Below are positions 3,439 to 56,300 of a stretch of DNA of 64,000 bases, piece by piece (within the stretch, counting starts at the first letter, position 1; each line of letters starts with the position of its first letter). A model generated the notes under the pieces. That model had not been told where the DNA came from. It saw only the letters and a program-made list of their open reading frames with translations, and did no database searches. A program made the position numbers and the translations under genes. The DNA lies in the IMG/VR virus record IMGVR_UViG_3300027770_000026, positions 124,001-188,000 of that record. The stretch is one strand, 5' to 3'.

Positions 3439-3714
3439 TCATTCGTAATCGTCGTCGTCGCTAGAATCGTAACTATCTTCTTCCTCTTCTTCCTCTTCGT
3501 ATTCCTCAGAGACAGCAGAGTCTTTGGATAGAGTATTTAGATACTTGTCATGTTCACTTAATCCGTCGTAAACAGTAGCAGGGGCTTCCCATGCTCGCAA
3601 CCAATCGTAGACGTGTTGCGCAAGGTCTTCACGCTCCTTATCGGGAACGTATCCTAATACGATATCATACAATTCAAACAGTACATCTTCACTAAGTGCA
3701 TCATTATAAGCCAT
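3439..3714 (-). CDS. small acidic hypothetical protein
   Basis: 91 aa, GGAGA RBS, poly-E/D tail, between uvsX and uvsY. Confidence 0.75.
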   Translation of the reverse strand: MAYNDALSEDVLFELYDIVLGYVPDKEREDLAQHVYDWLRAWEAPATVYDGLSEHDKYLNTLSKDSAVSEEYEEEEEEEDSYDSSDDDDYE

Positions 3715-11875: not shown

Positions 11876-12442
11876 TTAATTTAGCTGGTTGATACAGCGT
11901 ACTATATTTTTTGCCCAGTTACTGGCTTTTTCTGCTAGTTCCCGATCGGATTCAATCTTCTTACCATCCTGGATGGTGCTTTCTAGCATACTCTTAGGTG
12001 GCGCTGTGAAACCCAGATAGCTAGCAAATGCGTTATGTATACCGTGTATGTGTTGGAAGCCGTCACTACTACCGCTTACTATGGTAGCAAATACTTTCTT
12101 AGCCATTGGGTTAATTTTGTGTTCGTTAGCCCAATCGTCAAAGTTGTCCATGCGCTCGATAAAGCTTTGGGCTAAACTGCTATGCACACCCCACCAAATT
12201 GGGGTAGCAATAACAACAGCGTCCATATCAATTACACTTTTGAGTAATGCCGTCATATCATCTGCACTGCCGTCGTCTGCTGCAAAGTTTGTGCTAAAGT
12301 CGTAAGTCATGCCTTTGAGCGACCGTACTACAACATCGGCGCCTTCGCGTTCCAGTGCTTGTTTAGCCACGCGACACAGTACTCGTGTGTTGCTGGGTTT
12401 GTTTACAGCTTTTAAGCTGGCTTCTACTATTAATATACGCAT
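11876..12442 (-). CDS. flavodoxin-like NAD(P)H-dependent FMN reductase family protein
   Basis: S...SNT FMN-phosphate loop, D.VVIATPIWWG, FIERMD. Confidence 0.85.
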   Translation of the reverse strand: MRILIVEASLKAVNKPSNTRVLCRVAKQALEREGADVVVRSLKGMTYDFSTNFAADDGSADDMTALLKSVIDMDAVVIATPIWWGVHSSLAQSFIERMDNFDDWANEHKINPMAKKVFATIVSGSSDGFQHIHGIHNAFASYLGFTAPPKSMLESTIQDGKKIESDRELAEKASNWAKNIVRCINQLN

Positions 12443-12465
12443 GTGAGTATTTATTGATCTTTAAT

Positions 12466-25719: not shown

Positions 25720-25743
25720 GTTAGTATTTACCTAAATCCAAAA

Positions 25744-27297
25744 TTAATTGATTGGCCTGCTGAATACAAACGGCATGGGCAAATCATTATCCGTTAGTCT
25801 ATCTTTAATTTCGTCGTACAATCCCTGATCCCATTCGCTAACCAATCTCGCCATGCGTGTTATAAGCAATACAGCGGATACTAAATCGTCTGTTTCGCCC
25901 CATTTAGCCGCAAAACTGCTGCCTTTAGCTTCAAAATTCTTAAGTTCTGATATTAGTGCTGCACTGTGAATCACAATTCTATCAGTTTCCACTAGATTTT
26001 TTAATTTAGCGCATGCAGCTAGCTTTTCCCTGTTGGTTGTAGTGAAGCCTTTGCGTGATCTACCGGGCTCCGTTAGGAACAATCCAGCAAATTTATCTTC
26101 ACCTAGATCTCTTATTACTACAAGTGCTGCTTCGCCCAGTGTATTGTTTTCCACAGTATAATAAATCTTGTCATTTTCCCGTGTGTATTCCAATATCTGT
26201 TGCGTTAATTGGCGTAGTATGTTAACCTGCTGCTCAATTGGCGTCTTATTGTGCTGCCACTCTGCTACCTGATACATGCCCGGCAGTTCAAAGACTTCTA
26301 TTGCAGCCTTGTCGCCGCCTGTACCCAAGCAAGGATCCAGTGCTAGCAAATAGGTCTTACCCGGCTTAGGCTTGCGATACCATCGTATCTGCCCAGTCTT
26401 AAATTGTGGATCAGTTGCTTGCATGCGCGATAAATGTAGTGGGTCAATTAGCGTTTCGCTAGCAATAATGAACTCAAGATCGTGTTCACGCCGGAACTTT
26501 TCATCGCCAATTCTACTGCGTTCTTCTGCTGCCCATTCCTCGTCACGTTCAGGATGTTGGCGCCAATCTGCTTTGAATCCATAAAAGCCATTACGTCCCA
26601 GCATGGTCTTATTGCCATATTCGTCAATACACTTGTTGGCTTCGCGCCAAATATCGCTAAACTGGTCTTCGTCGCTGTTGGGTGTGCTAGTAATAATACA
26701 CTTACCACCCGTACTCAGTGTAGGCGATATGGAAGTCCAAAACTCACGTCCAATACGTGGCTGCACGAATGCAAATTCGTCCGCATACACCAAGCTCAGG
26801 CTCATACCGCGTCCTGTTGTTTCTGTAGTGGTTGCGCTTACAATACGCGAGCCGTTGTCAAATTCTATGCTGCCTTTATTGTAGCTAGTAGATCCTGCAC
26901 GTATAAAGTCAGGTACGCTTTCATACCCAAAACGTATTCTGCTCATGATTTCCTGCGCACCTGTGTACTTGTGCGCAGCGATTAGGATAGTTACGTCAGG
27001 ATTAAACATAGCATACCATATGAGATAGCCCGAAGCACAGGTAGTCTTCCCCGTTTGTCTACTCAGCATGGCTACACAGAATCTGTTATTGTGATATGCG
27101 TTAACTAGGTCTACTTGGAATCCAAACGGATCAAATAGCATGCGTCCCTTAACTGGATGCTGTATGTAAAAGTACTTGCGCATGAAGTACATAGGGCCCG
27201 TAACGGGATCTGCACACAATTGCAATTCGTCCAGTTGGTCCTCTGTAAAAGTCTCAACTTTGTGTGCTTGTTTAACTAGGGCCGGCTGAGAATTCAT
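25744..27297 (-). CDS. terL: terminase large subunit (T4 gp17-like)
   Basis: SRQTGKT Walker A, YADEFAF Walker B, TSTPN, LALDP, VENN and DDLV nuclease motifs. Confidence 0.95.
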   Translation of the reverse strand: MNSQPALVKQAHKVETFTEDQLDELQLCADPVTGPMYFMRKYFYIQHPVKGRMLFDPFGFQVDLVNAYHNNRFCVAMLSRQTGKTTCASGYLIWYAMFNPDVTILIAAHKYTGAQEIMSRIRFGYESVPDFIRAGSTSYNKGSIEFDNGSRIVSATTTETTGRGMSLSLVYADEFAFVQPRIGREFWTSISPTLSTGGKCIITSTPNSDEDQFSDIWREANKCIDEYGNKTMLGRNGFYGFKADWRQHPERDEEWAAEERSRIGDEKFRREHDLEFIIASETLIDPLHLSRMQATDPQFKTGQIRWYRKPKPGKTYLLALDPCLGTGGDKAAIEVFELPGMYQVAEWQHNKTPIEQQVNILRQLTQQILEYTRENDKIYYTVENNTLGEAALVVIRDLGEDKFAGLFLTEPGRSRKGFTTTNREKLAACAKLKNLVETDRIVIHSAALISELKNFEAKGSSFAAKWGETDDLVSAVLLITRMARLVSEWDQGLYDEIKDRLTDNDLPMPFVFSRPIN

Positions 27298-27351
27298 AAC
27301 AGTATTTACTTTGGGCTCAGATAGCTTATTTTTTATTCCTATTATATTTCT

Positions 27352-27933
27352 TTATAGATTATGATAAAACTCTTCACCATCAATTTCTAGATCGTTATTA
27401 TATCTTACCGTTATTTCAATGGCAGGAGTATTCATGTGCATACTGTGAAAGATTACCGTAGGAACAACTATTATAATTGTTTCGCCTGTTGAGTTATTTT
27501 TCCACAAGCTTTCCATATTAGCATTATTTTTTTTATCTTTTAAACGTTTCCAGCTAGTAGTGGAAATTAATTTATCAAATAATGATTGCAACGTTATTTC
27601 GGCAATTTCGTCGTCTTCCGGTGGGGGAGTTTTACTGCGCTGTAACGCATCTTGTGCTGCTTGTTTCTTAGCACGGAATGCGCCAAGGTCAACTACATCA
27701 CCTTCACGCAAGGTAGATTTAATCTTTAGTAAGGTCCAACTAGCATCTGCGTCGCTAGCAAACATACGCATTGCATCATCTATATGCATGGCTACGATGT
27801 TGTAAGACTTACTTACATATTGCTCTGCATCTTCCCGAGACATGGGTAGTGGGTCAATGCTACGGTAAGCCTTGTCAGGATTATGAACCACAACATAATC
27901 GCGTGGTTCACCTCTCGTTCCTGAATTAATTAC
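27352..27933 (-). CDS. -1 frame extension of the 490-aa protein (or stand-alone GTG-start ORF 27352-27891)
   Basis: Frame is open from 27951 across the upstream stop. No ATG until codon 17 of the GTG ORF, and the GTG at 27891 lies within a predicted stem. Confidence 0.65.
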   Translation of the reverse strand, partial: VINSGTRGEPRDYVVVHNPDKAYRSIDPLPMSREDAEQYVSKSYNIVAMHIDDAMRMFASDADASWTLLKIKSTLREGDVVDLGAFRAKKQAAQDALQRSKTPPPEDDEIAEITLQSLFDKLISTTSWKRLKDKKNNANMESLWKNNSTGETIIIVVPTVIFHSMHMNTPAIEITVRYNNDLEIDGEEFYHNL

Positions 27934-27942
27934 TTTTTTTTT
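27875..27942 (-). other. candidate programmed -1 ribosomal frameshift signal (A_AAA_AAG plus downstream stem-loop)
   Basis: TCA AAA AAA AAG TAA, then 8-nt spacer, TCAGGA/TCCTGA outer stem and TGAACCAC/GTGGTTCA inner stem. Confidence 0.7.
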
Positions 27943-29402
27943 GAGCCTTCTTTAATTTTGTCAGCTATCTTGTGTGCTTTGGTAATTGTGCTTTTTTCCA
28001 ATGGTGGCTTGTCGCCTGTTGCTTTCATTGCAGCAGCCATCCCAATTGCATACTTGTTCTTAGCTTTCTTTTTCTTAGCTTCGTTTACACTTTCCGTAGC
28101 TTGTCTTCTCAACAATGCAGGTGTTCTTTCGTCATGCGGACCGTAGTATCCTGCTTCTTCGGCTTCTTTGCTACCTTTGTATTCCTTTGGTGCTGGCTCA
28201 TCTATTTCATCTTCTACATTTGATGCAGTCATGCTTAAAGAATATTTGTCCAACAATTCTAATGCAGCATCGTCATGTCGACGATTGCCGGTATTGTCAT
28301 ACGCTAACTTGTGTTGTGCATAACGCTTCATGTCGGCTGCTGCTTCTGGACCGTGTGCATCGGTTACTGCAATGACAACCTGCAGTGCTTCGTGTTTAGC
28401 TCTTGCACGGGCCTCTGAATCTTCCTGAGCATCCTTCTCTGTGCCGTAGTGACGTGCATAACGATTCCACATGTCTCTGAGAGAAAGTTCTTCGCCTTCT
28501 TGTTCGGCAACTGGCATAGGACGACCGCGTCCATGTGTGCCGTGCGATAGCTTTTCAGGATGCGCTGCTGGCCCCATGCCTGCACGTTGTGCTGCTGGTA
28601 CATCTAAGGCTGCTAGTTTGTCTGGGCTAAATCTGTTGTCTCTGCTGAGATCTAGACTTACTCCTCTACCCTTACCCGGACCTGTATCACCTACCAGATG
28701 CTTCATGTCACTAAATGCTTCCTGCACTACATAAACAGGCGATTGTGTCATCACACGGTTTTCAATTACGGGATACACTTTGATGAATCCGTCCTGATTA
28801 CGAACTGCGTATTCACGCGAGCCGTCAATGAACGATTTTGCACCTTCGCTAATTGCACGACCCACAGCACTCATGTCTAGTTCATCTGCATAGTGCTGAA
28901 TCTTAGTTGCTTTCCATTCCTGCATGAGACGATCTTCCATGAGATCGTCTTCTGACTTGGGAAGTGGATTATCGCCGTGACCTGCCTTTGTTACCTTATT
29001 AGGAGTACTAGCTGTGTGGTCAGTGTTAACAATGTCCAACAAGTTCTTCATGGTCTTAGGCTTTGGTGCATTTGCTAATGCTTCTTCTACTTGCTCTTCC
29101 ATTACTGCACCGCATGATGCTTCTTCTGCGTGCTCGTATTCCGGTAATGCACCAAGTCCCGACTTCTGCATGATTGCTCGCATTGCACCCGATGGTAGTT
29201 CCTGTGCCGCCACCTTTACTACAGGAGCTGCAACAGGCTCTTCATGAGCATGCGCTGGGCTCATGCCCGACAGCTTTTGAAGTATTGCAATCAGTTCGTT
29301 TGGATCTTCACTACGTATTGTAGTATTTTGCATTACACCATCTCCACTTGGGTCGCTCTCATTGGAGCGTGTGTCGATGTTTAAATTGTATTTTGTTGGC
29401 AT
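27930..29402 (-). CDS. modular low-complexity protein, probable internal head/core protein
   Basis: 490 aa, GAGGA RBS, many hydrophobic-x-E sites, C-terminal basic module NKYAIGMAAA. Confidence 0.75.
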   Translation of the reverse strand: MPTKYNLNIDTRSNESDPSGDGVMQNTTIRSEDPNELIAILQKLSGMSPAHAHEEPVAAPVVKVAAQELPSGAMRAIMQKSGLGALPEYEHAEEASCGAVMEEQVEEALANAPKPKTMKNLLDIVNTDHTASTPNKVTKAGHGDNPLPKSEDDLMEDRLMQEWKATKIQHYADELDMSAVGRAISEGAKSFIDGSREYAVRNQDGFIKVYPVIENRVMTQSPVYVVQEAFSDMKHLVGDTGPGKGRGVSLDLSRDNRFSPDKLAALDVPAAQRAGMGPAAHPEKLSHGTHGRGRPMPVAEQEGEELSLRDMWNRYARHYGTEKDAQEDSEARARAKHEALQVVIAVTDAHGPEAAADMKRYAQHKLAYDNTGNRRHDDAALELLDKYSLSMTASNVEDEIDEPAPKEYKGSKEAEEAGYYGPHDERTPALLRRQATESVNEAKKKKAKNKYAIGMAAAMKATGDKPPLEKSTITKAHKIADKIKEGSKKK

Positions 29403-29419: not shown

Positions 29420-29980
29420 TTATAGTTTCGGACGCGATTTATTACCCAGTGGGCTCATGTTCTTTGAGCCGTACACAGGGCCAGCGTCAGCTTTGGGCTT
29501 ACCGCCTGCAATTTCATATTTGAATTCACTCTTGTTCTTCTTGACCAGTTCCTGATTATACTCGTCGCCGTAATACTTTTTACCGTCTTCTGTCTTTTCG
29601 TAGTCGGTACCTAGTACTGCTTTGCCGCTCAGTTCCTTTTCTTCACGATCAGTTTCTAAGGGTTCTTCTGGTGTGCGAACAATAATCTTGTTCATGGTAA
29701 TCTTCAATCCATTTGCTAGCACGTCACGTATTGACTCGCGAGCAGCGGGAAGCCCCAACACTACATCTACCATGTAAACTTCTGTGGGACCAATATCTGC
29801 AAAGTCCAGCGCACGACCTTGTAGGATTGTTTTCTTGACAGTTCCTACTTTCTTAACGTCAAATTTAGCGAGAAGCGATTCCATTTTGTCCTGCATGTCG
29901 GCGTCCACCGGTACAGCAAACTTAATACGGAATATGTATTCCTTCTCAGCTTCTTCGATATATTCAAATAGTTTTTTCAT
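29420..29980 (-). CDS. hypothetical late protein (MKKLFEYIEEA)
   Basis: ATG 29980 follows TAAATA at 30001-30006 and AAGGG. The track start at 30061 overlaps the neighbouring gene. Confidence 0.75.
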   Translation of the reverse strand: MKKLFEYIEEAEKEYIFRIKFAVPVDADMQDKMESLLAKFDVKKVGTVKKTILQGRALDFADIGPTEVYMVDVVLGLPAARESIRDVLANGLKITMNKIIVRTPEEPLETDREEKELSGKAVLGTDYEKTEDGKKYYGDEYNQELVKKNKSEFKYEIAGGKPKADAGPVYGSKNMSPLGNKSRPKL

Positions 29981-29999
29981 AATGATAGCCCTTGATGCT

Positions 30000-30479
30000 T
30001 TATTTAGCGTTTTCTTTTGAATTCTTAATGGTTGCGAGTAATTGATTTCTATTCCCCACAATACGACCCTGTGTTTCAGTCACGCCGTTAGGTCCATTTG
30101 TGCTGCTAGCTTTGGCCCGCAAGGCCTGCAATTGCAAGCTTACTGTGCGCAGTTTAGCGTCAGTCTTACCCTGCTTGGCGTCTAGCGCAGTCTTTAATAA
30201 TTGCGCCGCAACTGCTAATAGCTCTGCACTATGGCGCGGTTCTACGTTCATTGCTAGCTCTTTAATTTCCCTGTACGTGGCCATTGCTTCGTCTGCAATG
30301 TGATCCACTTCCCCTTCTGTTTCGGGAATGTTGCGTACCTGAGGTAATGCTTTGTCTACACGGGTACCTAAATCATTTAATTCTGATTCCTCTGTAATTT
30401 CTAAGGGCAATGCAAAATCCGTAGTTTCCCCGCTTGCCACAGTTGACATATTAAACAATTCTTCTAATTGTTTGTTCAT
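30000..30479 (-). CDS. putative terminase small subunit
   Basis: 159-aa helical protein (ELAMNVEPR..AELL..A.QLL, VG.RNQLL) resembling gp16-type proteins, near terL. Confidence 0.5.
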   Translation of the reverse strand: MNKQLEELFNMSTVASGETTDFALPLEITEESELNDLGTRVDKALPQVRNIPETEGEVDHIADEAMATYREIKELAMNVEPRHSAELLAVAAQLLKTALDAKQGKTDAKLRTVSLQLQALRAKASSTNGPNGVTETQGRIVGNRNQLLATIKNSKENAK

Positions 30480-31246: not shown

Positions 31247-31549
31247 TTAAATTCCTGGAGGTCCCGGTGGTTGTGGATTTATTATTACCCCATCCCCGTC
31301 TGACTTTACCGCACCCGGCACAGTGGTTGCTGCAACACGCGACGATTTAGTGTTGGACACAATCTGATTAGTGGATGTAGGTTTTGCCACCGTGGTAGTT
31401 GTTTTGGGCAGTATGTTAGATTTTGCAACTGCGGTAGCAGTCACAGTCATTGTACCGTCTGCCGCAATAGCAACCTTATTAACATACTTTGTGCTGGTAT
31501 TATCGCCTTGATAACGTGCAGGCTGTGATACTGTTGTGTTAACCGCCAT
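31247..31549 (-). CDS. hypothetical T/A/V-rich protein
   Basis: 100-aa ORF filling the gap and overlapping the upstream gene by 11 nt. Weak RBS. Confidence 0.55.
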   Translation of the reverse strand: MAVNTTVSQPARYQGDNTSTKYVNKVAIAADGTMTVTATAVAKSNILPKTTTTVAKPTSTNQIVSNTKSSRVAATTVPGAVKSDGDGVIINPQPPGPPGI

Positions 31550-32801
31550 TTTTAGTAGTACTCTTATTTGGGAATATCTTGTTAGTAACTGCAGATATTG
31601 CGGTATTCTGAATAGTATTCTTAACCACTGTACCTAATTCTGATTTAACACCGGGAACAAAGTTCTTATTACTAATAGTTTTAGCAATGCCAATTGCACT
31701 GATCAGATCGCTTAAGCGAGGGCGACCTTTGGTAATGTTACCAATGATTCCTTCTGCACGATCTAGTAGTCCACCCGGGCCTAATAGTGAACGTGGGCTA
31801 CCACGCATTAATGGACTAGAATGATTGTCATAAAATCTCACTGCATCCAGTATGCTTGCTGCTGATACTTGATCCATATAGCTCACGCCTTCGTACGCTA
31901 TGGACATTTTACAAGTAGCTGTACCGTTTTGCGAATAGTCAAAGCTATCGTGGTCCCAGCCTGTGATACGAGGATTGTGCAGTACTATCATGCTGGCTTG
32001 CTTTTGTCCCAGCGGGAATATTTCAATTGCTTTGAGCAAGTGATAGGATTTATCCACGCCAGTTGAATGGAATACTGAACCGTTTGCGCCCCATGCATCG
32101 CTAAACATTGTGCCCACTGTGTCTGCTGTGGTAATTGATTGTAGCAGTAGGGGATACTTTAATGCCATATCCCATTCTGCGCCCGGACGTGGTGTGGATG
32201 TGTCGTCAGTTTGAGTCTGAGAAACTTTATTTGCTTCCGCAGTATTACTGACAGATTTTTTGAAAATTGATTTAACAGCATTACCTACTGCGTTAATTAA
32301 TTTAGAAAATGGATCTCTCATTTTGTTTGGGGAATCAGTACCACTTTTAATAATATATTTGGTACCATCGGCAAAATACCAATTGTAATAAAATGCCCAG
32401 AATGCCCAAATGATATCGCTTGTGTCGTCGTGGAACGTGACGTTTATGGGCTTGTACTTGATCTTTTTATAACTGATTGCAACCTTGTTATATTGATTGT
32501 GTACTGTGTGGTCAATGTCAAAGCTTGGCAGGTCAATGCTCTTGGTTAGTACGCTGAGTACATCGCTATTACGTTGACTACCAATTGTTTCCGCAAATTC
32601 TTTGGCTTCGTACACATTGTTAAGTGCGTCAGTATTAAACACAAAGTTAACGTGGAACATGCCCTTAAACTTAGGGCTGCGGATCATGTCTTCTGCTGTG
32701 AAAACTTTAGCTGCGTGTGACCAATCCTGGACTCCATCCTGGGCCGTAATGCCGGAAGTAAATCCCTTGATCTCTCGCTTTAAAAAACTGCCTATGCCCA
32801 T
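31539..32801 (-). CDS. tail tube-like baseplate/tube initiator protein (gp48/gp54-like)
   Basis: KSIDLP, NQYN, Y.PINVTFHDD and NPRIT...HD.FDY tube-fold motifs. Confidence 0.65.
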   Translation of the reverse strand: MGIGSFLKREIKGFTSGITAQDGVQDWSHAAKVFTAEDMIRSPKFKGMFHVNFVFNTDALNNVYEAKEFAETIGSQRNSDVLSVLTKSIDLPSFDIDHTVHNQYNKVAISYKKIKYKPINVTFHDDTSDIIWAFWAFYYNWYFADGTKYIIKSGTDSPNKMRDPFSKLINAVGNAVKSIFKKSVSNTAEANKVSQTQTDDTSTPRPGAEWDMALKYPLLLQSITTADTVGTMFSDAWGANGSVFHSTGVDKSYHLLKAIEIFPLGQKQASMIVLHNPRITGWDHDSFDYSQNGTATCKMSIAYEGVSYMDQVSAASILDAVRFYDNHSSPLMRGSPRSLLGPGGLLDRAEGIIGNITKGRPRLSDLISAIGIAKTISNKNFVPGVKSELGTVVKNTIQNTAISAVTNKIFPNKSTTKNGG

Positions 32802-32885: not shown

Positions 32886-33503
32886 TTAGCCTGTTGATAG
32901 CACGTTGATTGAACGGCCAACGGCCGCGCCAACACCATTCTCCATTGGAATCTGGAGTGCGTTATCAAACTTAATTGTCATTGTAATTTCAACAGCGCCT
33001 GATTCAGCATATGATATTGCACCATAGTCTACGCTGTTTAGGTAGCAACCGTAGCATTCCCATGTTTCAAGAACATTTGGAGTATATGCGCCGTTGCCGC
33101 CGTCTAGCATTTCTAAGCGTGTTACAAACTTGTAGCTTGTACCTGCGCTTGCACTTGCTTGCTCGAAGAAGTCCAATTGACGCTGTAGCTGCTCACCAAC
33201 GAGCTTGCTAACCTGCCCCTGAACGTCGTCACGTACAACCAGGTTCATGTCTTGCCATGAATGCTTGCCTGCTAGCTTGACCTTGCTGTTGTACACATCT
33301 AGTACAACTTCTTCAAAGCTAACGTTTGGACGTGATACGCTAACTACCTGCTTGGTCAATTCGCTTCTAGGACTTGTAACGCCAAAATTCTCAAGTGTAA
33401 CGCGGAAGCGATACTTGAGTTTAGGCATCAATAGGCCCTGAGAGGTTGCACTCTGGTCACTGGCCAGTGGTACGGTAAATCTTGTTAAACTTGTAATACT
33501 CAT
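32886..33503 (-). CDS. gp19: tail tube protein (gp19-like)
   Basis: PKLKYRFRV, RP.VSF, AGK.SW and WECYGCY motifs, immediately downstream of the sheath. Confidence 0.85.
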   Translation of the reverse strand: MSITSLTRFTVPLASDQSATSQGLLMPKLKYRFRVTLENFGVTSPRSELTKQVVSVSRPNVSFEEVVLDVYNSKVKLAGKHSWQDMNLVVRDDVQGQVSKLVGEQLQRQLDFFEQASASAGTSYKFVTRLEMLDGGNGAYTPNVLETWECYGCYLNSVDYGAISYAESGAVEITMTIKFDNALQIPMENGVGAAVGRSINVLSTG

Positions 33504-33631: not shown

Positions 33632-36600
33632 TTAGGCCAATGCTTCTCCAGTATTCTTGATACGGATTGGGATGTAGATGAATTCCACGGCCTTCACAGG
33701 CTTAATGGCAATATCAATCCACAGCTCGTTACGATCAATGCGCTCTGGTGTATTGTTGCTGGTATCGCACACTACGAGGAAGTCGTACAATGCACGTAGT
33801 CCAACTAGCTCGTTGAAGAATGTTTCAACTGCTTGTTTGACTTCGTTACGTGTCAATGTATCGTTTGGCTCGAAGAAGTATGGTTTTACTAACACTTCTA
33901 GTTGCTTGCGAACATACACAATCAAACGTGCTACGTTCACACGGTCTAGGGCACTTGCAGTTACTGCTAGTGTCTTCTGACCCCAAACAACTATTCCCCC
34001 TGTTGGCTGGATGACAATTGGGTTTAGTCTGTTCTGATACATTACATCGCGAACGCCCTGTCCTAGTGGACTTGGTACGAACTCACCCTCCGAGCTTAGG
34101 TAGCCAACGCTTGTGGCATTGTTAACAACACCACGACGTAGACCAGCTGGGGCAAACCATGGATACGCAACTTGATCGTTTAGGGCGATTGTGCGCAGCA
34201 TGATGTGACTTGCTGGTACCATTACATCTTCACCTGTTAGGTTTGATGTATATGCGTTTGGATAGAACACTGCAGAGTATTCATTTAGTGTTACTAGTCC
34301 TTCTTCACTGTTTGTTGGAGCATTGTTTGCATTGGTTGCCCAATTAAACAAGTCTGTACCAGTTGGCTGCAAGCGGAATGGAGGGTCAACTAGTACAAAC
34401 GCTGTGCCCTTACGGTCAGTGTTTAGTACTACCATTTCGTCCAGCAATTCTGGATAACCTGGGCATGCAATGAGTGTAAAGTCATTTTGCTCTTGGCGTG
34501 CATCCAAGCTAGCGTTGAGACCTGCTTGCATTGCTTCAACGATAACACGACGTTGTGCCTTGCGGCCCATGTATGGTGAACCGTCTGACTTGACTCCTAC
34601 CTTGCTTACCCATGCATCACGTAAAGTTACTGTAGCGTCAAAGTAGTTAACCTTGTACTCTTTGACATTGTAACCGCTGCGGCGTGTGTTGAACAACAAC
34701 ATACCTTGTGGGTACAAGTCTGGATCTGGTGCATCGCTGTCTACGTAACTGCTATCCAACAGGTCCACGATGTCTGAACTGTCTGATGCAGCATCGCCAT
34801 CACGGTAACGAGCATCAGCAAACAAGACACCATTTTCTGTTGTTTGGTCCGTGTTGTTGATTGTTTCCCATGTGCTTGTGCCTGCATTGTAACGCTTGAT
34901 TAGAGGATAGTTTTCTAGATCACTAGTGTCAATCCACAAATCGTTTGTTGCTAATGCAGTCACGCCGTCGCTCTGGTACTCTGGCTGAGTTGCAGAAACG
35001 ACTGGGCCCAATGGGTCAGTTAACCCAAACTCATCGTGATAACCAGTCCACGAGCTACCGTTGTGTACCATGATGTCTACTTCGTCTACCAGGCTGTTGT
35101 ACCACAATGTACCATCAACTGGTGTAGTACGAGGTTCTGCAACACCTGCAGTGTATGTCAATGTCAACCAATTAGTAACTAGACCAGCTGTGATGCCGCA
35201 AGCTGCCAATGGTGAGCCGCCGCCGTCGGCTAAGACGAAGTCATTACCCTTACTGTGTGCAATGGTCAATGTGTTATCTGTATTAACTGTCATTGTCATG
35301 TTTGGAATACTTGCACGACCAAATGCTGTTGCAAGACCTGCAGCAGTTAAAGGATCACCAGCACCAGCGTTATCCAATGTTACTGTGTAGGTAATTCCAC
35401 CAACAATTACATCAAAGTCGTCACCATCCACTAGTGTAGGACTTGTTGTTATGCCGCTAGTTGTTAGCGGAATACCAGTTGCGTCCCACTTGACTATTTC
35501 CATCTGCAAAGTATCAAGGTTTGCAATGTCATATGGCATGTATAGCGCATTAGGAGCGATAGTGTTAGCCGATACACCATCTGTTGCTAGTCCTGCTATC
35601 GCAGGATCGTTAGCAAAGTCAGCCGACAGAGCATATAGCGGAGTTGATACTGTTACCCAATCACCTGCTGCACTCATACGCTTAACAGCGATGTTTGCAC
35701 CATTGTTTGGGCTAGTTGTCTTGAACCAAATTGATCCAGTTGGACGTGGATTTGCACCACCTGTCTTGAAGCCTGGAACAATTGTGTGCTTGTTCTGATG
35801 TAGATCAACTGTCTTGTATTCTACGTTTTCTGTCAGACCAAGCAGTGCTGACAAACCGTTTGTAGTAGCCGAATCAATTGTTACGCTAATCGAACTGTAA
35901 ATGACCAGTTTGTTGCTTTCAATTATAGCCTTCATGTTTGCATTAAGTGTACCGTTGGCATTGATTGCATCAACTAGGTCTTCAAGGTAGTTATTTGGGG
36001 CGTTGGGCACTGCGATGGTCGTGCCATTGATTACCAAGTCCCATGTATCGGTAATTGCAGTAGTAACTTCCACTGTTCCGCGCACTGTTGCGTGACGACG
36101 CTTCCATTCAGCTGTACCAATTAGTGCCCAGTTCTGATTTAGATCTGACCGACCGCCTTTATAGTAAGCTTTGATTGCCCCACTAACGATTGACACAGCG
36201 TAGTCGCCTGTACTACCTGTTTGTGGTAGTGGCAATCCGGCTGTTAACTCTGCACTGGATGTGATTAGTAATGGAGATACTACAGTGAATACCTGATCAG
36301 CTGCATTCCATTCCTGCAAGCCCCATGCTGTTTCTGCGAGGTCCAACCAGTATGTACCTGTTGCAACTTCGCCTGTTGCGGCACTCGAACTTGGTACTAG
36401 TTCTGTTAGATTTACATCTGGACGCATGATGTAGGCCTTGCTGGCCACGCCCAGGAAGCTGTATGCTGCTAGCAGACCGTACTCATTGAGTTCGTCGCCT
36501 TGAACAACTGCTCCACTAACTTTAGTAAAGCTTGGTACGCCAAAGTTTGTTGCTAGTTCACGTTGGCTTGTAACCAACTGCACCTTATTAATATTTGCTG

Positions 36601-36751
36601 CCAATGTACCGGTAGCTGTACCGGTTCCTGCAGGATTAGTCTTATCTTGCGCAGATGGCGCAATGATAAGCGGGACTGGGCCCGCCGCTGCAGGCAAATA
36701 TTGACTTTCGTCAATAATTGTAATTTCTGTTCCAACCGAAGTTAAAGCCAT
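33632..36751 (-). CDS. gp18: contractile tail sheath protein (gp18-like) with large insertion
   Basis: PWFAPAG.RRG, NPI, WGQKT, DRVNVARL, CDTSNNTP and KPVKAVEFI motifs. Confidence 0.95.
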   Translation of the reverse strand: MALTSVGTEITIIDESQYLPAAAGPVPLIIAPSAQDKTNPAGTGTATGTLAANINKVQLVTSQRELATNFGVPSFTKVSGAVVQGDELNEYGLLAAYSFLGVASKAYIMRPDVNLTELVPSSSAATGEVATGTYWLDLAETAWGLQEWNAADQVFTVVSPLLITSSAELTAGLPLPQTGSTGDYAVSIVSGAIKAYYKGGRSDLNQNWALIGTAEWKRRHATVRGTVEVTTAITDTWDLVINGTTIAVPNAPNNYLEDLVDAINANGTLNANMKAIIESNKLVIYSSISVTIDSATTNGLSALLGLTENVEYKTVDLHQNKHTIVPGFKTGGANPRPTGSIWFKTTSPNNGANIAVKRMSAAGDWVTVSTPLYALSADFANDPAIAGLATDGVSANTIAPNALYMPYDIANLDTLQMEIVKWDATGIPLTTSGITTSPTLVDGDDFDVIVGGITYTVTLDNAGAGDPLTAAGLATAFGRASIPNMTMTVNTDNTLTIAHSKGNDFVLADGGGSPLAACGITAGLVTNWLTLTYTAGVAEPRTTPVDGTLWYNSLVDEVDIMVHNGSSWTGYHDEFGLTDPLGPVVSATQPEYQSDGVTALATNDLWIDTSDLENYPLIKRYNAGTSTWETINNTDQTTENGVLFADARYRDGDAASDSSDIVDLLDSSYVDSDAPDPDLYPQGMLLFNTRRSGYNVKEYKVNYFDATVTLRDAWVSKVGVKSDGSPYMGRKAQRRVIVEAMQAGLNASLDARQEQNDFTLIACPGYPELLDEMVVLNTDRKGTAFVLVDPPFRLQPTGTDLFNWATNANNAPTNSEEGLVTLNEYSAVFYPNAYTSNLTGEDVMVPASHIMLRTIALNDQVAYPWFAPAGLRRGVVNNATSVGYLSSEGEFVPSPLGQGVRDVMYQNRLNPIVIQPTGGIVVWGQKTLAVTASALDRVNVARLIVYVRKQLEVLVKPYFFEPNDTLTRNEVKQAVETFFNELVGLRALYDFLVVCDTSNNTPERIDRNELWIDIAIKPVKAVEFIYIPIRIKNTGEALA

Positions 36752-38608: not shown

Positions 38609-38647
38609 AAAGGAACTCCTTGCAGAGTATTTATGCCCGTCGTCAAG

Positions 38648-50389: not shown

Positions 50390-53300
50390 TTATGATATGT
50401 CAAATACCGTAGTTTTTTCTCTAATAAAGATAGCCCATTGAGTATCAGTATCAGCCATGCTAGACGTTGGGTCTGTTACATCATACCAGTTATAAGCTTG
50501 CTTGATTGCAAGTACAACTCGTAGCCCACTCTTAGGTGCTTCGTTAAACGTAACCTGATAGTACGATCCTGCGCTTTGATCCACTGTATAGCCTGATGTC
50601 ATCTTTTTACCAGCTACGTATACTAGCACCGAGTCCGTATCATGTTCGGAAGTAGTCAGTAGTAATGGCAGCGCAAAAGACACAGTGGCTCCGTTTGCAG
50701 AGTATGTTTCGCTATTCATGTACTCGGATGCGGGTAACTGATTTCTGTAGCTCATGTCCACTGCAAGTGTACCTACGCGATGATTTCCTGCGCCGGTGCC
50801 TTTCGTTGCTCTTCTCAAACGACTAATGTAGTCTGACCCTTTCTCCCAGTATTCAATTCGTTCCTTGCCAATCATTACTACGCCCGGACGATTGATTAGC
50901 GGGGACGGTGCAACAAGTGCAGAAGCATTAGTTAGATAAATTCTGTCACTGGCTGTAGTAACTGCTTGAGAAACTGTTGTTGAGTTTTCCAATGGTAATC
51001 TGTATGCACTCAGGCTGCCCATCATATCTTTGAATACCCTAAAGCCTATTGTTGAGCTAGTAGTTGATGTTCCTGCAAAGTAGTGAACAACAATTACGTC
51101 ATTGTCGTCAATGCCGCCTGCAATATTCACTATTCTATTGGATTCGGCTTGTAAGTACCATCCTACGACAGGAGCAATGTATACTCCGTTCTTGTATACT
51201 TGTACACGGTTAACTGCAATAATATCATCGCTCAGAACAATCTGTCCGCGAGAATAGAAGTTTGCAAGTTGTTGCTGTGTTGGACTTAATCCAATTCCGT
51301 ATATGCCATATCCTTGATACTGAATGTGCAGTGTATTATCAATGCCAAACACTTCTGTTCTGATACCGGTTAGCGCAGTGTCGTTATACGTTGTAACTAG
51401 TATTTTAGTATTAGTAGAACCGTCGTCTACCATTGATGTCAGTGTTAAGGTGCTACCTTGTACATAGTAATCGCCGCTTGGTAATACTGTTATAGTAACT
51501 ACATCGTTTAGTGCGGGTGTAGCCGTCAACGTAACAACGCCTGAACTGTAACTGCTAATAGATACTATTTGGCCGTTAACTGTTGCTTGAATATCGCCCG
51601 CTACTAGTCCCGCAATATTAAAGTTTGGGCATACTGGTATGTTAAATTGAGCAGTTGCTCCGGTGCCTAGTGCGTATGCTGTTGCAGGCGGGGTTAAACG
51701 TAAGCCTGCTTCTGCACCTTCTGCAACAGCATATGCAATTGTACTAGTGCTCAATGGGGCTGGCGCGCCAGATGGATTTGTTATTGTATAATTCAATGAT
51801 CCATTAATAAAAATTGATTCTACAAAACTTTCTGTGTAGTTTTTGAGATCAACCGGTACACCTGCTACTGTGAGGTATGAAACAATTCTAATTACTGCCC
51901 CAATTGCAGGAGCAGGACTAATAGTTACTAATACATCATTTTCATAAGGAGCTGAATCGCTTGCAAAGGTATGTGCGGTCTTTATTCCATCAACTACAAC
52001 AATACATTGACGCAATGGATTATCAAGTCCTACTCCGGTTACTCGAAACACTTCGCTAGATCCGTTACCTACAAAGTTTTGAACTTGTTCTACGCTTGGC
52101 CCATTATCGTTTGTTACTACAGCAGTGATAATGCTGTTTGCTGCAGGTGCCGTATTAAATTGTAACTCTGCATTTATTTGTCCCAATATGTTAGAGTAAT
52201 CAATAATATATGCAACACCTGGATCCTGTACCAGTCCGTTAACAAATACTGTTATATTATCGACACTACTTGGTACTGGGTTGAGCGCAAAATACGTAGT
52301 TGTTCCGTTTCCTGATATTGTTTGGATACTAATATTCTGATTTTGTGACTCAGCTGTGAATACCTTAACATCCAATGCGTCAAACACTTGCCCCGACACT
52401 AGTTCTTCTGTGCTTGGTGTCGTATCTGGTCCAATGAAGCTGCCGCCCGAATTAGAAACTTCAGCAGATGGGTCGTAACCGCTAGACGACGCAAATCGTC
52501 CACCAGATTGATATGTGTCATACCCGCCTAATTCTACTAAGTTGCCGTACGGGTCTAGTTCCCAATTGTCAAAATCAACAGAATCAAATCCACGCGCCTG
52601 ACTTGCAAAGCCTGGTCCAGTTGAGAATTTAGGACTTACAATCTTAGTCTGATCGTAATCTGCTCCTAACAACAATGGCAGTAACGGAGGATTCAATATC
52701 AACGATATAGTTGTATTGTTACTTGGTGCTGTTGCAAAGTTTATGGTCATCTCGCTTGGATACACCGTGTAATCGCTTGGCTCTACTAGAATATCGCCCA
52801 ATGCAACCTGCATTAATTCTTCGTACATGAAGTCTTGTGGCAGGTCAAATGTAGTGGTTACGCCGTCGCCAATATGTGTTTGAATAATTCTTTCTGGTAT
52901 GCCGGCTTGTCCAGGTTGCGGATCGTAGAATGCTGCAATTCTATCGGCTGCATGCCAATCGTCAAATCCTGGATTATCCTGTGCAGGATCGCGTGTTTCC
53001 GGATAAAGAATATCTGCTGTTCCCTTAACACGGTCAAATCTCATTCCAGTTTTAAACATTCTAACTGGAGTCTTACCTAGTACTGCATATGCTCTTGCGC
53101 CCGATCCATGTCCGGGCAAGCTAACGATTTCTACTGTTGGGGGAGTCAGATATCCCTCGCCTTCGTCTACTACTATGATTTGACGAATTGCATCAAGATT
53201 TACTACACCTGGGCCGCCTGCTACGTTTGCAAGCACATCACCTGGCAAGTCTGTAGTATCAATTGAACTGTCCTTAATTGCTTGCTGATCCAACCATAGC

Positions 53301-56300
53301 TTTCTAGCAGAGAAATAATTATCCGCACCTAATGTTTCAAACGATTGTGCAAATCCTAAATTTACTGCGTAAGCACTAGCAAGTCTGACGTTTCCTTCTA
53401 GTACAGTTTTACCGCCTGTTAACTTAATTGTTGGCGCAATGTCGTATCCAGTACCACCGTCAGCTACTACGATTGCAACTACGCTGTATCCTCGGTTATC
53501 TCTGTAACTGCGCCATGGCCATTCATTTTCAAATCTGCTTGCTTGCTCCGGGTCGTCAACTACACTTGTTTCATAGTGGTTATCAACTAGATGAGGAGGG
53601 CAGTCAAAGTCTGTTGTCAGACTACCAAACACGTCCTTGCCCGAGTATACAGAAGTGTATTCTCGTATCTTAGTATGATAAGGTTTGACTTCTGTAATAT
53701 ACTTTTCTAAGCTGTCGTCTATGTCTAGCGCGTACACAGGACGTTCTGCAAGTTCAGCAACAAAGTGTTTGACTTTAATGAAGCTACTCTTGAATGCCCA
53801 GTCTAGCTGACGCTGTTCAACTAATGCATGACGGACCATACGGAAAAACCAGCTGTTCCACAAATACTTGTATTCATTTACAAATACGTTGTCACGCATT
53901 GCTGTCAGAATGTTTCTAAGTTCAATGGTAGGCTCAGAGTCAAATACTGCACTGTCAAACGAACTTGTATCAAATGACATTGATGTATTGAAATCTGCTG
54001 CAGTGATGTCTAGCTTAATAGTGCCGTTTTCCAGTGCCATTATGGTGGTATCACCTGTTGAATCCTTACGCAGAACTCTCCAGTAGCCCGGACCCAATAC
54101 TTTAACATTAGTATCTACATAATTGCTGTCCTGAAACTCTTGCTCAGTAGCAAGTGTTACTGCTGCGATTGATCCCTCGGGATAGTCTGTAGAATAATAA
54201 TCAAGTCGCGACCAATAGCGTGTTGTATCGTATTTCTGTACACGTGATAGCATTAAGTTTGTGCCGTCCCACATATAGATCGTCCACAAATTTTTACGTG
54301 TCTCGTCGCTTTCAACTAGCAACAAATATCCTGCAGGTTTTGCCAGCAAGTCGCTAACAATAATATCTGCGTATGTAGGAACAGATTCGTCCCAGTTTTG
54401 ATACTCGGTAGTAAGTGTTGTTGAGCCATCGTCAAACGTTGTATCACCTGTGTCGATTGTTAAGTCTTGAACTTCCATGATCAATGGCTGTGGATCAGAC
54501 TGATTCATTGTGCCTAGATCAACATCTTCAACAATGATAGATGCTAGATATTCATTTAGATATTCTGCGCAAACTTCAATTGCCCCTACACGGTCGTTAA
54601 ACATTGTCTGACGTGGACGAATCTTAACGCCCAGTCGCTTGTGCGCAGCTAGTTCAACATCTGGTACATTATTTCCTGCTAGGTCACGCCCCGTCAGGCT
54701 GTCGACCATCTTGTTAACAAGTGAAGTTGGCGGTGCAACGTTATCGCCTTCGCTTAACAATGTCCATTCTACGTGACGTGGGCTATTTTGCTCAACTCGC
54801 AGAACTTCAATTTGTAGAATTTGTTCGCCGTCTACTAAATTATCACGCAAGTTTTGAGTAACAACTCCGGCACTGCCCGCAGCAGCTACCCATTGGTATG
54901 GGCCATTAGTTAATGCTGTTGCGATGCTTGCTACACTCAGTGTTTTCTTACTTGACTGCGAGATAGACTGCTTGCCCGCAACCCAGAAGTAGTATCGGAA
55001 CACCGTAGCGCCGTTGCTGTCTGTTGTAACTTTGGTATTATACGGCTGCAGTCCGCCCAGTGGAGGTGTACCCATTGACGGAGTCATACCATTGACATTG
55101 TACGCTGACGGCACTGTGGTGCTTTCAATCCATTCACATACAGTAATAGTACTGCCTGGGAATAATTGACCCCAGTTCTTTATCTTGTACGATAAGTCGC
55201 CTTGTTCATACCATAACCATACTGCAGTTGAATTATCCCACCATGTAGTTCCAACTTTTTCTTCTGCCCAGAAAGTATTTCCGGGCGAATTCTCTTGATA
55301 GATAGATGGGTCAATTGATAATGTATAATCAACATTGATCATAGCTTCACTGTCGTGTAGATCCTTTAGCGGATCCCATAAAGATAAGAACTCAATAACC
55401 TGATCTTGTACTGGATCGTAGCTGAGTGCGCGATTAATTAGTTTAGTATCAACCACTTGCTCTTGTTGTGTTTCTGCAGCCCATCCGTCTTGCGTATTAT
55501 CGTATTCGTATATCTTGCCGCGAACTGACCAAGGACTTGCAATGATAACTGTATCGTTTACTTCCGATAGTGCTGAACCAAATCCTGTAGTAGAATCATC
55601 TACTGCACTAATAGGATTGAATACAGATCCTTCCCACACATACTGTGTACTATATAAACTCGAACCCGGTGCTGCGCCGTAACGACTGTGCAATCCAAAG
55701 CTTTCTACTGCACCGTATCCAATGATTACATCTGTAAATGTAGTGTCGTTGGCATCAAAAGTTGTTGTACTGCTATCCAGTATTAACTTCCATACATATG
55801 GTGCAGTTGGGTTGCCTACTAGTAGCTTGCCGCTGGTTGTAAACTTAACAGTTTTACCAAACAAGTTTAATCCGTTAGTGTTTGGTCCAGTTAGTACCTG
55901 TGTTAACGACGCAGTTCCTGATGTTGCACTAAAGTCGTAGATTCTAACAATACCGTCAGACACTAGTGTATCAAATGTAGTGTCGCCTGTATCAATGATT
56001 GTGCCAAACGTATCGTAAGTAGTGAATCTTGATCCCACTGCCACACGTACATTTTCACCAACTGTAGTAATGTCAATTGGGTGCTGCGACTTAATGGGGA
56101 TACTTGTAGTCCCTGTTACGATCGCATTTATGTCTTGTGTTAGAATACCGTTCTCGTCAATAGTATACACATAAATGTGGCCATTACCTGCAGTATCTAG
56201 TATTGCTACCTTGTTAGAGTCTGCGGCCATTACAATACCAGTACCTGTTGCTGTTTGTGTAACAGGCGCTAGTTGTATGCTGTATGTATCAGTTGCTGCA

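What the first reader, a model, noticed from the sequence alone, without database searches (positions are those of the whole stretch)
27352..29402. Candidate programmed -1 frameshift extends a head-type protein by 193 aa
Seen (minus strand): the 490-aa ORF ends GGC TCA AAA AAA AAG TAA, so the heptamer A_AAA_AAG (27939-27933) sits immediately before the stop. After an 8-nt spacer comes a two-tier stem-loop (TCAGGA 27924-27919 with TCCTGA 27880-27875; TGAACCAC 27910-27903 with GTGGTTCA 27891-27884), and a weak SD-like GAAGG lies just upstream. The -1 frame is open through the site (VINSGTRGEPRDYVVVHNPD...) and is the frame of ORF 27352-27891, whose GTG is inside the stem. The predicted fusion is about 683 aa. 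The extension has its own LRE site and an AT-rich distal part. Known: A_AAA_AAG plus hairpin is the dnaX/IS3-type signal. Inference: a fixed minority of a capsid-core protein carries extra cargo, a recoding use outside the usual tail-chaperone context. The A9 run could also work by transcriptional slippage or phase variation.
Basis: partly seen in the sequence, partly recalled or inferred. Interest (0 to 1): 0.85.

Follow-up and report, generated by a model that had tools for sequence, protein, structure and literature searches.

The report
Conserved -1 recoding site, jumbo phage
In an uncultured freshwater jumbo phage, a 490-residue probable virion protein ends in a slippery A-run followed by a conserved RNA hairpin, and this probably lets some ribosomes shift frame and add a 193-residue, two-domain tail; it is a new example of a known trick, supported here only by comparison of sequences.

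Summary
The A9 run is not an assembly error. Independent assemblies and 12 diverged relatives all keep the A-run, the G and the TAA.

Comparison supports recoding:
- The A-run never varies at synonymous sites, although Lys codons nearby vary freely.
- The two-tier hairpin is kept by compensatory changes.
- The downstream ORF is always in the -1 frame and is under purifying selection.
- Five of 13 distinct relatives, the window among them, have no ATG for the downstream ORF (ACG twice independently, GTT, CCA).
- No fused one-ORF version exists in any database searched.

My best reading is a -1 ribosomal frameshift at A_AAA_AAG. RNA-polymerase slippage on the A9 run may contribute and would give the same 683-aa protein.

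Caveats:
- Eight relatives carry an ATG 11 nt after the stop, so translational coupling is possible there.
- An in-frame GTG lies inside the stem in every sequence.
- There is no RNA or protein evidence.

The "capsid-core cargo" idea rests only on synteny with a virion protein of phage PA5oct. Both proteins have no known function. I rate this a new member of a known kind, of moderate interest.

The parts
27930..29402 (-). Upstream ORF of 490 aa (zero frame). About half is predicted disordered and its function is unknown. It occupies the position of the PA5oct virion protein gp281. Its C-terminal 36 aa are a widespread module (YAIGMAAAMKATGDKPPLEKSTITKAHKIA), followed by EGSKKK and the stop.
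   Evidence: synteny
27946..27950 (-). SD-like GAAGG, 5 nt 5' of the heptamer. It is part of the block GAAGGCTCA, which never varies in 12 of 13 relatives.
27934..27942 (-). A9 run (T9 on the template strand), the longest homopolymer in the window. It is a candidate RNA-polymerase slippage site.
27933..27939 (-). Slippery heptamer A_AAA_AAG, in frame and invariant in all 13 distinct sequences.
27930..27932 (-). Zero-frame stop TAA directly after the heptamer, invariant.
27925..27932 (-). 8-nt spacer between the heptamer and the base of the outer stem.
27875..27924 (-). Two-tier stem-loop. The outer helix is 27924-27919 with 27880-27875. The inner helix is 27911-27902 with 27892-27883. It is supported by covariation.
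27916..27918 (-). ACG codon in the internal loop of the hairpin. Eight relatives have ATG here; others have ACG, GTT or CCA.
27889..27891 (-). In-frame GTG inside the 3' arm of the inner stem. It is the only canonical start candidate upstream of M31, has no SD, and is the rival start site.
27706..27933 (-). -1 frame, extension residues 1-76: linker plus conserved core domain ending STLR. In three relatives this is the whole ORF.
27604..27705 (-). Extension residues 77-110: low-confidence linker or helix (EGDVVDLG...PPPEDDE).
27352..27603 (-). Extension residues 111-193 plus the stop: AT-rich (28-29% GC), confidently folded alpha/beta domain. It is absent from the short-form relatives.
25744..27297 (-). 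Context: the large terminase subunit gene directly downstream.

Best explanation
Most ribosomes translating the 490-aa ORF stop at UAA (27932-27930). A fraction slip back one base on A_AAA_AAG (27939-27933). The slip is helped by the two-tier hairpin that begins 8 nt downstream, and probably by the stop codon waiting in the A site. These ribosomes continue in the -1 frame through 193 more codons, giving a 683-aa protein that reads ...EGSKKK-VINSGTRGEPRDY.... The extension adds a 76-residue core domain, a linker and an AT-rich second domain. RNA-polymerase slippage on the A9 run (A9 to A10 in the mRNA) may add to the same product.

Shown: the signals, their conservation, the covariation of the hairpin, purifying selection on the -1 ORF, and the lack of an ATG in the window's lineage.

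Inferred: that the shift happens, its efficiency, and any function of the fusion.
For: (1) The slip site is under nucleotide-level constraint. AAA AAA AAG TAA is identical in 13 distinct sequences whose upstream proteins are only 49-74% identical. Four of five other Lys codons within the preceding 20 codons switch between AAA and AAG. No third position varies in the six codons before the stop. This genome prefers AAG (497) to AAA (331).

(2) The hairpin is real. 95% of pair cells are paired, against 26-46% when the partners are slid. One pair shows AU, GC and CG; another shows CG and UA; another shows AU and GC. Every lineage folds to -18.6 to -29.1 kcal/mol. The outer stem starts 8 nt after the heptamer in 11 of 13 sequences.

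(3) The downstream ORF is always in the -1 frame and open from the heptamer. This holds even in L021, which has a 3-nt deletion between heptamer and hairpin.

(4) Five of 13 sequences lack an ATG for the downstream ORF. ACG appears in window/L009/L002 and, separately, in L022. L021 has GTT. L012 has CCA and also lacks M31.

(5) The ORF is nevertheless under purifying selection in those lineages. dN/dS is 0.10-0.24 overall. In codons 17-30, upstream of M31, synonymous changes outnumber non-synonymous ones by 8.5:3.5 (window against L022), 8:2 (L012 against window) and 3:1 (window against L002).

(6) No fused single-ORF homologue was found. The word-indexed search of the 5.8-billion-protein collection listed only 452-507-aa family members and a 313-aa fragment. 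A profile of the extension read against all 1.84 billion representatives found only 188-aa and 71-aa forms. This fits a need for both the short and the long product.

(7) No canonical start has an SD, and the GTG is buried in the stem.

(8) No promoter-like or terminator-like site lies at the junction, where the stop and the -1 frame overlap.

(9) A_AAA_AAG is the most shift-prone heptamer in E. coli and is the dnaX site (PMC5009743).
Against: - Eight of 13 relatives have an in-frame ATG 11 nt after the stop. There the downstream ORF could be made as a separate protein by termination-reinitiation, and the hairpin could serve that coupling.
- An in-frame GTG is invariant in all sequences. It is also constrained as part of the stem.
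- In L012 and L021, which both lack the ATG, the base of the hairpin is 15 nt from the heptamer, longer than the usual 5-9 nt.
- GAAGG is 5 nt from the heptamer, not about 10 nt as in dnaX.
- The host is unknown, so it is unknown whether it has a single tRNA-Lys, on which the shiftiness of AAG depends (PMC5009743).
- The covariation amounts to few independent events in a small, closely related clade, and the stem overlaps coding sequence.
- There is no transcript or peptide evidence. The only RNA-library contig lies elsewhere, at 28613-28782.
Confidence: 0.55

Rival explanations
1. The main route is transcriptional slippage. RNA polymerase stutters on the T9 template run and makes a share of mRNAs with A10. 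Ordinary translation of these gives the same 683-aa fusion. The hairpin would then have another role.
For: The run is at least 9 in all 13 sequences (A9 in 12, A11 in L021). The synonymous third base of TCA, which makes the run 9 rather than 8, never varies. Runs of 9 A or T slip efficiently with bacterial RNA polymerase, and Thermus thermophilus dnaX uses exactly that (PMC5009743). This mechanism would also work in L012 and L021, where the hairpin spacing is poor for ribosomal frameshifting, and in hosts that have a separate tRNA-Lys(CUU).
Against: A hairpin downstream of the run has no known role in polymerase slippage, yet it is conserved by compensatory changes and sits at frameshift-typical spacing in 11 of 13 sequences. 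The invariance of TCA is shared by the neighbouring GGC, so it may reflect a different constraint. No RNA reads across the run were available.
Confidence: 0.2
2. There are two separate proteins and no recoding. The downstream ORF is started by ribosomes that have just terminated at UAA. They use the ATG in most relatives. In the window's lineage they use the GTG at 27891 or the near-cognate ACG. The terminal KKK is then simply a C-terminus.
For: Eight of 13 relatives have an ATG 11 nt after the stop, and gene callers annotate separate genes of 187-192 aa. The GTG is invariant. The hairpin encloses the ATG position, as in structures that enforce translational coupling. The residues between the heptamer and the hairpin are poorly conserved as protein.
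Against: The ATG was lost at least three times while the ORF stayed under purifying selection. L012 has no ATG, no M31 and no near-cognate codon before the GTG. In L012 an ATG abutting the stop opens the wrong frame. The GTG has no SD and lies inside a stem of -19 to -29 kcal/mol that a terminating ribosome would not fully open. This model does not explain the synonymous-site invariance of the A-run, nor the frame-preserving 3-nt indel in L021.
Confidence: 0.2
3. It is an artefact or decay. Either the true sequence is A10 (one ORF), or the downstream ORF is a dying gene fragment, or the phage population varies between A9 and A10 at the DNA level (phase variation).
For: Homopolymers are error-prone in sequencing and replication. 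Only contigs, not raw reads, could be inspected.
Against: A9 is seen in four independent assemblies of near-identical phages. The same frame arrangement is seen in 12 diverged relatives. dN/dS of 0.1-0.2 excludes a pseudogene. No A10 version exists in any database searched.
Confidence: 0.03

Closest known systems
E. coli dnaX (tau/gamma) -1 frameshift
   Same: It has the identical heptamer A_AAA_AAG and a simple stem-loop a few nucleotides downstream, with a purine-rich SD-like element upstream (PMC5009743).
   Different: In dnaX the shift leads to early termination and a shorter product; here it bypasses a stop and lengthens the protein by 193 aa. The SD-like element is 5 nt from the heptamer rather than about 10 nt. 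The stem-loop is two-tiered with a 7-nt internal loop. The zero-frame stop abuts the heptamer.
IS911 / IS3-family OrfA-OrfB fusion
   Same: A_AAA_AAG near the end of the upstream ORF gives a trans-frame fusion. The downstream ORF can also be started on its own near the shift site. The 3' structure is more elaborate than a simple hairpin (PMC5009743).
   Different: These are phage proteins of unknown function in a structural and packaging module, not a transposase. There is no sequence relation. The separate start (ATG) is present in only part of the clade.
Phage T7/T3 gene 10A/10B, and the capsid or tail frameshifts of Lactobacillus phage A2 and Listeria phages A118, A500 and PSA
   Same: A minority C-terminally extended form of a phage structural protein is made by programmed frameshifting, outside the tail-chaperone context. 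In several of these phages the extension is a separable, mobile domain (PMC5009743).
   Different: The upstream protein here is not a major capsid or tail protein, and its virion location is unproven. The extension is not Ig-like in the AlphaFold model. The slip site and the stimulator are different.
Lambda G/GT tail assembly chaperone frameshift
   Same: It is a conserved -1 frameshift near the 3' end of an upstream phage morphogenesis gene, and it sets a fixed ratio of short and long products.
   Different: The location is wrong: between a gp282-like gene and the large terminase, not between tail tube and tape measure. The upstream ORF is 490 aa, not about 100-140 aa. There is no homology.
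Thermus thermophilus dnaX transcriptional slippage
   Same: A run of nine A/T lets RNA polymerase add bases, so that two products arise from one gene (PMC5009743).
   Different: In Thermus the slipped transcripts give the shorter product. No downstream hairpin is part of that signal.

Membership tests
-1 programmed ribosomal frameshift site (dnaX/IS3 type) | X_XXY_YYZ heptamer in the zero frame | tested here: met
   A_AAA_AAG at 27939-27933 is in frame and invariant in 13 of 13 distinct sequences.
-1 programmed ribosomal frameshift site (dnaX/IS3 type) | A -1 frame that is open across the site and encodes a conserved, selected polypeptide | tested here: met
   193 codons are open. dN/dS is 0.10-0.24, including in lineages without an ATG. 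The frame is kept across a 3-nt indel in L021.
-1 programmed ribosomal frameshift site (dnaX/IS3 type) | A 3' stimulatory RNA structure about 5-9 nt after the heptamer | tested here: met
   The spacer is 8 nt in 11 of 13 sequences and 15 nt in L012 and L021. Fold energies are -18.6 to -29.1 kcal/mol. 95% of cells are paired, with compensatory changes at three pairs.
-1 programmed ribosomal frameshift site (dnaX/IS3 type) | A 5' SD-like stimulator at about 10-14 nt (optional; present in dnaX and IS911) | tested here: inconclusive
   GAAGG is present and invariant in 12 of 13 sequences, but only 5 nt from the heptamer, and it is absent in L021. The spacing expected for dnaX is quoted from my own knowledge.
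-1 programmed ribosomal frameshift site (dnaX/IS3 type) | Constraint on synonymous sites of the slip site across relatives | tested here: met
   No third-position change occurs in the six codons before the stop, while Lys codons nearby vary.
-1 programmed ribosomal frameshift site (dnaX/IS3 type) | A trans-frame protein product is observed | not testable with these tools
   No proteome was available. The diagnostic peptide would be VINSGTR.
Transcriptional slippage site | A homopolymer of 9 or more A/T | tested here: met
   A9 in 12 sequences and A11 in one. The length threshold is taken from PMC5009743.
Transcriptional slippage site | Length heterogeneity of the run in RNA but not in DNA | not testable with these tools
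   Only assembled contigs were served. The single RNA-library contig covers 28613-28782, not the run.
Tail assembly chaperone G/GT | Location between the tail tube and tape measure genes, with a small (about 100-140 aa) upstream ORF | tested here: not met
   The pair lies between a PA5oct gp282 homologue and the large terminase, and the upstream ORF is 490 aa.
Translationally coupled separate genes | A canonical start codon at or near the upstream stop | tested here: not met
   The window has ACG at 27918-27916. The nearest canonical start is the GTG 39 nt after the stop, inside the stem. The feature is met in 8 of 13 relatives, which have an ATG 11 nt after the stop.
   There is no PHROG or significant Pfam hit. 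There is no similarity to PA5oct gp281. There is no Foldseek hit, and the model has pTM 0.26. Only positional equivalence to an MS-detected virion protein holds.

The most novel reading that the evidence does not exclude
Within one small phage clade, the same gene pair moves back and forth between two modes of expression. In one mode there are two products, using an ATG with termination-reinitiation alongside recoding. In the other, the start codon is lost and recoding is obligatory. One hairpin serves both as occluder of the start site and as frameshift stimulator. The extension is a modular add-on: a 76-aa core, with or without an AT-rich acquired domain that joins exactly at STLR|E. It tethers a packaging-related function to a virion protein encoded directly upstream of the large terminase.
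Probability: 0.12. Interest if true: 0.7.

Novelty: new member of a known kind. Interest (0 to 1): 0.5.

Why it matters
If confirmed, this adds a well-defined, evolutionarily conserved recoding site in a jumbo myovirus lineage related to PA5oct, at a gene position where none is annotated. Gene callers currently split the locus into a 490-aa gene and a truncated 163-aa gene starting at M31, or miss the second gene altogether in L012. Annotation of the clade would therefore change.

The mix of relatives with and without a start codon is a natural experiment. It shows how frameshift-dependent and independently initiated expression replace each other.

It answers no long-standing question, and the function of both proteins is unknown.

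Tried and rejected
- Near and protein-level searches of GenBank phages found no relative of either ORF. The only hit was the 36-aa C-terminal module in cyanophages.
- PHROGs and Pfam gave nothing significant for either ORF. Sugar_tr, TCAD7 and Alginate_lyase scored below their cut-offs.
- A profile of the extension searched against 1.84 billion representatives found only its own family. The 922-aa hit P0131 is a MucBP repeat protein that matches a 23-residue stretch seven times, so it is spurious.
- AlphaFold models of both proteins gave no Foldseek match at E <= 0.001 in PDB or BFVD. The protein-atlas look-ups scored below useful levels.
- Small-terminase idea for the downstream ORF. Among 78 more distant relatives with TerL 58-63% identical, none carries either ORF. 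The genes upstream of TerL are hypervariable and show no profile similarity to the extension. The idea is unsupported.
- M31 (27843-27841) as the true start was rejected. Codons upstream of it are under purifying selection, and L012 has Leu there.
- Rfam gave no family for the hairpin. One sub-threshold '6A' match comes from the A-run.
- No tRNA genes lie in the window.
- No promoter-like or terminator-like site lies at the junction.
- The scan of JGI metagenome contigs returned only the window's own contig.
Full report
WHAT THE WINDOW IS

The 64-kb window is part of a 265,892-bp contig from a freshwater metagenome, IMGVR_UViG_3300027770_000026. It carries the structural and packaging module of a T4-like jumbo myovirus. 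Recognisable genes include:
- tail sheath (33632-36751);
- tail tube (32886-33503, 31539-32801);
- baseplate and fibre genes;
- a 4520-codon ORF;
- a large terminase (25744-27297) that is 55% identical to that of Pseudomonas phage PA5oct.

No GenBank phage is close at the DNA level.

THE OBSERVATION

The upstream ORF has 490 codons. The -1 frame is open from 27951, and its first listed start is the GTG at 27891, inside the hairpin. The fusion would be 683 aa.

The heptamer alone is not remarkable. There are three in-frame A_AAA_AAG in about 60 kb of coding sequence. Only this one abuts a stop, opens a long -1 ORF (193 codons against 29 and 8) and is followed by a strong hairpin. The A9 run is the longest homopolymer in the window.

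NOT AN ARTEFACT

A 61-kb contig from the probable source run has A9, and so does an independent 253-nt contig from another sample that spans 27828-28080, without indels. Two further IMG/VR assemblies from other samples have A9 too. Only contigs, not reads, were served, so a minor A10 subpopulation cannot be excluded.

RELATIVES

The large protein database holds five full-length homologues of the 490-aa protein. They are 452-507 aa long, 49-64% identical by BLASTP, and cover the whole query. There is also one 313-aa fragment. None is a fused version of about 680 aa.

The downstream ORF has ten database relatives of 71-192 aa. An exhaustive profile search of 1.84 billion cluster representatives, with no length filter, found nothing else.

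I fetched the encoding contigs. This gave 13 distinct junction sequences, aligned as A2 and A3.

EVIDENCE THAT THE SLIP SITE IS FUNCTIONAL

- AAA AAA AAG TAA is identical in all 13 sequences. L021 has A11, because GGC TCA is replaced by ATC AAA, and it keeps the frame, the heptamer and the stop.
- The last six codons before the stop show no third-position change. Four of five other Lys codons within the preceding 20 codons switch between AAA and AAG, and other third positions vary in 3-6 sequences.
- The genome prefers AAG (497) to AAA (331).

EVIDENCE FOR THE HAIRPIN

Every lineage folds into the same two-tier stem-loop, with energies from -18.6 to -29.1 kcal/mol and z-scores from -1.9 to -5.2.

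I counted 16 pairs across the alignment. 95% of the cells are standard pairs, against 26-46% when the 3' partners are slid by 1-3 columns. One inner-stem pair occurs as A-U, G-C and C-G. Another occurs as C-G and U-A. One outer-stem pair occurs as A-U and G-C.

The outer stem begins 8 nt after the heptamer in 11 of 13 sequences. In L012 and L021 the lower helix is re-formed closer to the inner stem and begins 15 nt after the heptamer.

These are few independent events in a small clade, and the stem overlaps coding sequence. The support is good but not overwhelming.

THE START-CODON PATTERN

This is the most telling result. In eight sequences the downstream ORF has an ATG 11 nt after the stop, in the internal loop of the hairpin, with no usable SD. 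At the same position:
- window, L009 and L002 have ACG;
- L022 has ACG;
- L021 has GTT;
- L012 has CCA.

L012 also has Leu (TTA) instead of M31, and an ATG abutting the stop that opens the wrong frame.

A tree of the junction region places the window/L009/L002 clade next to L017 (ATG) and places L022 next to L004 (ATG). ACG therefore arose at least twice, and the ATG is missing in at least four lineages.

The ORF remains under purifying selection everywhere, with dN/dS of 0.10-0.24. This includes codons 17-30, upstream of M31, in lineages without an ATG. M31, which gene callers chose for the window (the 163-aa form), is therefore not the real N-terminus.

L021 has a 3-nt deletion between heptamer and hairpin, which keeps the frame relation.

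The remaining canonical start is the invariant GTG at 27891. It has no SD within 19 nt and lies inside the inner stem.

MECHANISM

I commit to -1 ribosomal frameshifting on A_AAA_AAG, stimulated by the hairpin and possibly by the adjacent stop. It gives a minority 683-aa product beside the 490-aa product.

The absence of any fused homologue suggests that both forms are needed. If only the fusion mattered, a single inserted base would provide it.

RNA-polymerase slippage is a serious alternative or contributor. The run is at least 9 in every sequence, and nine is the length at which bacterial polymerase slips efficiently and which T. thermophilus dnaX exploits (PMC5009743). The protein product would be identical.

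In the ATG-bearing relatives a separate protein of about 188 aa, made by termination-reinitiation, probably coexists with the fusion. The arrangement then resembles IS911, where OrfB can also start on its own.

WHAT THE PROTEINS ARE

Both are of unknown function.

The 490-aa protein:
- It is about half disordered. 250 residues have pLDDT below 50, and pTM is 0.26.
- It has small folded islands and lineage-specific acidic insertions.
- It has no family or fold match.
- Its last 36 residues are a module about 90% identical in hundreds of otherwise unrelated metagenomic and cyanophage proteins.

Its upstream neighbour is homologous to PA5oct gp282 (E = 2e-16). The gene occupies the slot of PA5oct gp281, a 498-aa protein annotated as detected in virions by ESI-MS/MS. 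The two share no detectable similarity. 'Virion protein' is therefore a positional guess, and 'capsid-core' has no support.

The extension models as two domains: residues 10-76, and residues 111-193 at pLDDT 81-90. A poorly modelled linker joins them. There is no structural match.

Three relatives (L006, L019/L020, L012) have only the 76-residue core. It ends at STLR or STIR, followed immediately by the terminase gene. This is exactly where the long forms continue with EGDVV....

The added part is AT-rich, at 28-29% GC, which suggests an acquired module. Whether it is a protease site cannot be tested here.

More distant phages, with TerL 58-63% identical, lack both ORFs. The system is confined to a narrow clade.

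UNEXPLAINED

The block GAAGGCTCA before the run is invariant at synonymous sites in 12 of 13 sequences. RNAfold pairs GG-CUCAA (27947-27941) with UUGA-CC (27857-27851) in the window and in L012, enclosing the slip site and the hairpin. Both sides are invariant, so covariation cannot test this pairing.

VERDICT

The recoding interpretation is supported by comparative evidence but not demonstrated. The functional story is not supported. This is a new member of a known kind, of moderate interest.

Noticed in passing
window 27301-27308, 25723-25730, 12446-12453, 3532-3539, 38626-38633 (all minus strand): The motif TAAATACT sits 3-9 nt upstream of the ATG of the large terminase, of the 541-aa virion-protein gene and of the ORF 11876-12442; the other two copies lie 17 and about 100 nt upstream of the nearest ORF start. 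Before the terminase gene it is conserved in relatives (L006, L012, L019). It resembles the T4 late promoter TATAAATA but lies too close to the ATG for a normal leader. The count is not significant on its own (5 found against 3.6 expected), but all copies are on the coding strand.
   Followed up: partly
window 27941-27950 with 27851-27857: The invariant block GAAGGCTCA 5' of the A-run can pair with the near-invariant UUGA-CC in the codons for S-I-D-P of the -1 ORF. This would close a long-range helix around the slip site and hairpin. No covariation is available to test it.
   Followed up: partly
window 27933-28040 (C-terminus of the 490-aa ORF): A 36-aa module (NPYAIGMAAAMKATGDxPPLxKSTITKAHKIA) is about 90% identical in hundreds of otherwise unrelated metagenomic and cyanophage proteins, for example S-RIM8 gp114. 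It is often found in proteins that also carry DUF5661 and DUF5824. It looks like a highly mobile, strongly constrained peptide module of unknown function.
   Followed up: partly
window 27352-27603; L006 7380-7595; L019 373-588; L012 2167-2394: The downstream ORF exists in long (about 190 aa) and short (71-76 aa) forms. The short forms end at STLR or STIR. The long forms add a linker and an AT-rich (28-29% GC) domain at that exact point, so the domain looks acquired or lost as a unit.
   Followed up: yes
L013 3820-5065: One relative has two extra genes between the downstream ORF and the terminase gene: one of 116 aa, and one of 304 aa with a weak DUF559 endonuclease-like hit. This looks like a mobile (homing-endonuclease-type) insertion.
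   Followed up: no
window 50390-63952 (minus strand): A single ORF of 4520 codons, a giant protein, lies upstream (5') of the tail fibre and baseplate genes on the minus strand. It was not examined.
   Followed up: no
window 29420-30061: The listed 213-aa ORF starts at a TTG. Relatives (187-190 aa) and the alignment to PA5oct gp282 indicate that the real start is the ATG at 29980, giving 186 aa.
   Followed up: partly
window 28613-28782: A 170-nt contig from a lake metatranscriptome library matches the 490-aa ORF exactly. This hints that the phage or a near-identical one is transcribed in nature, although DNA carry-over cannot be excluded.
   Followed up: no
window 29270-29290 and 29170-29200 (490-aa ORF residues 36-47 and 73-84); L001 7449-7500: Short motifs ELIAILQKLSGM and MRAIMQKSGLG recall INDILRLAGV at the N-terminus of PA5oct gp281 and LLQLAGV in another protein that carries the 36-aa module (P0043). 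This may be a shared short linear motif among these disordered phage proteins.
   Followed up: no
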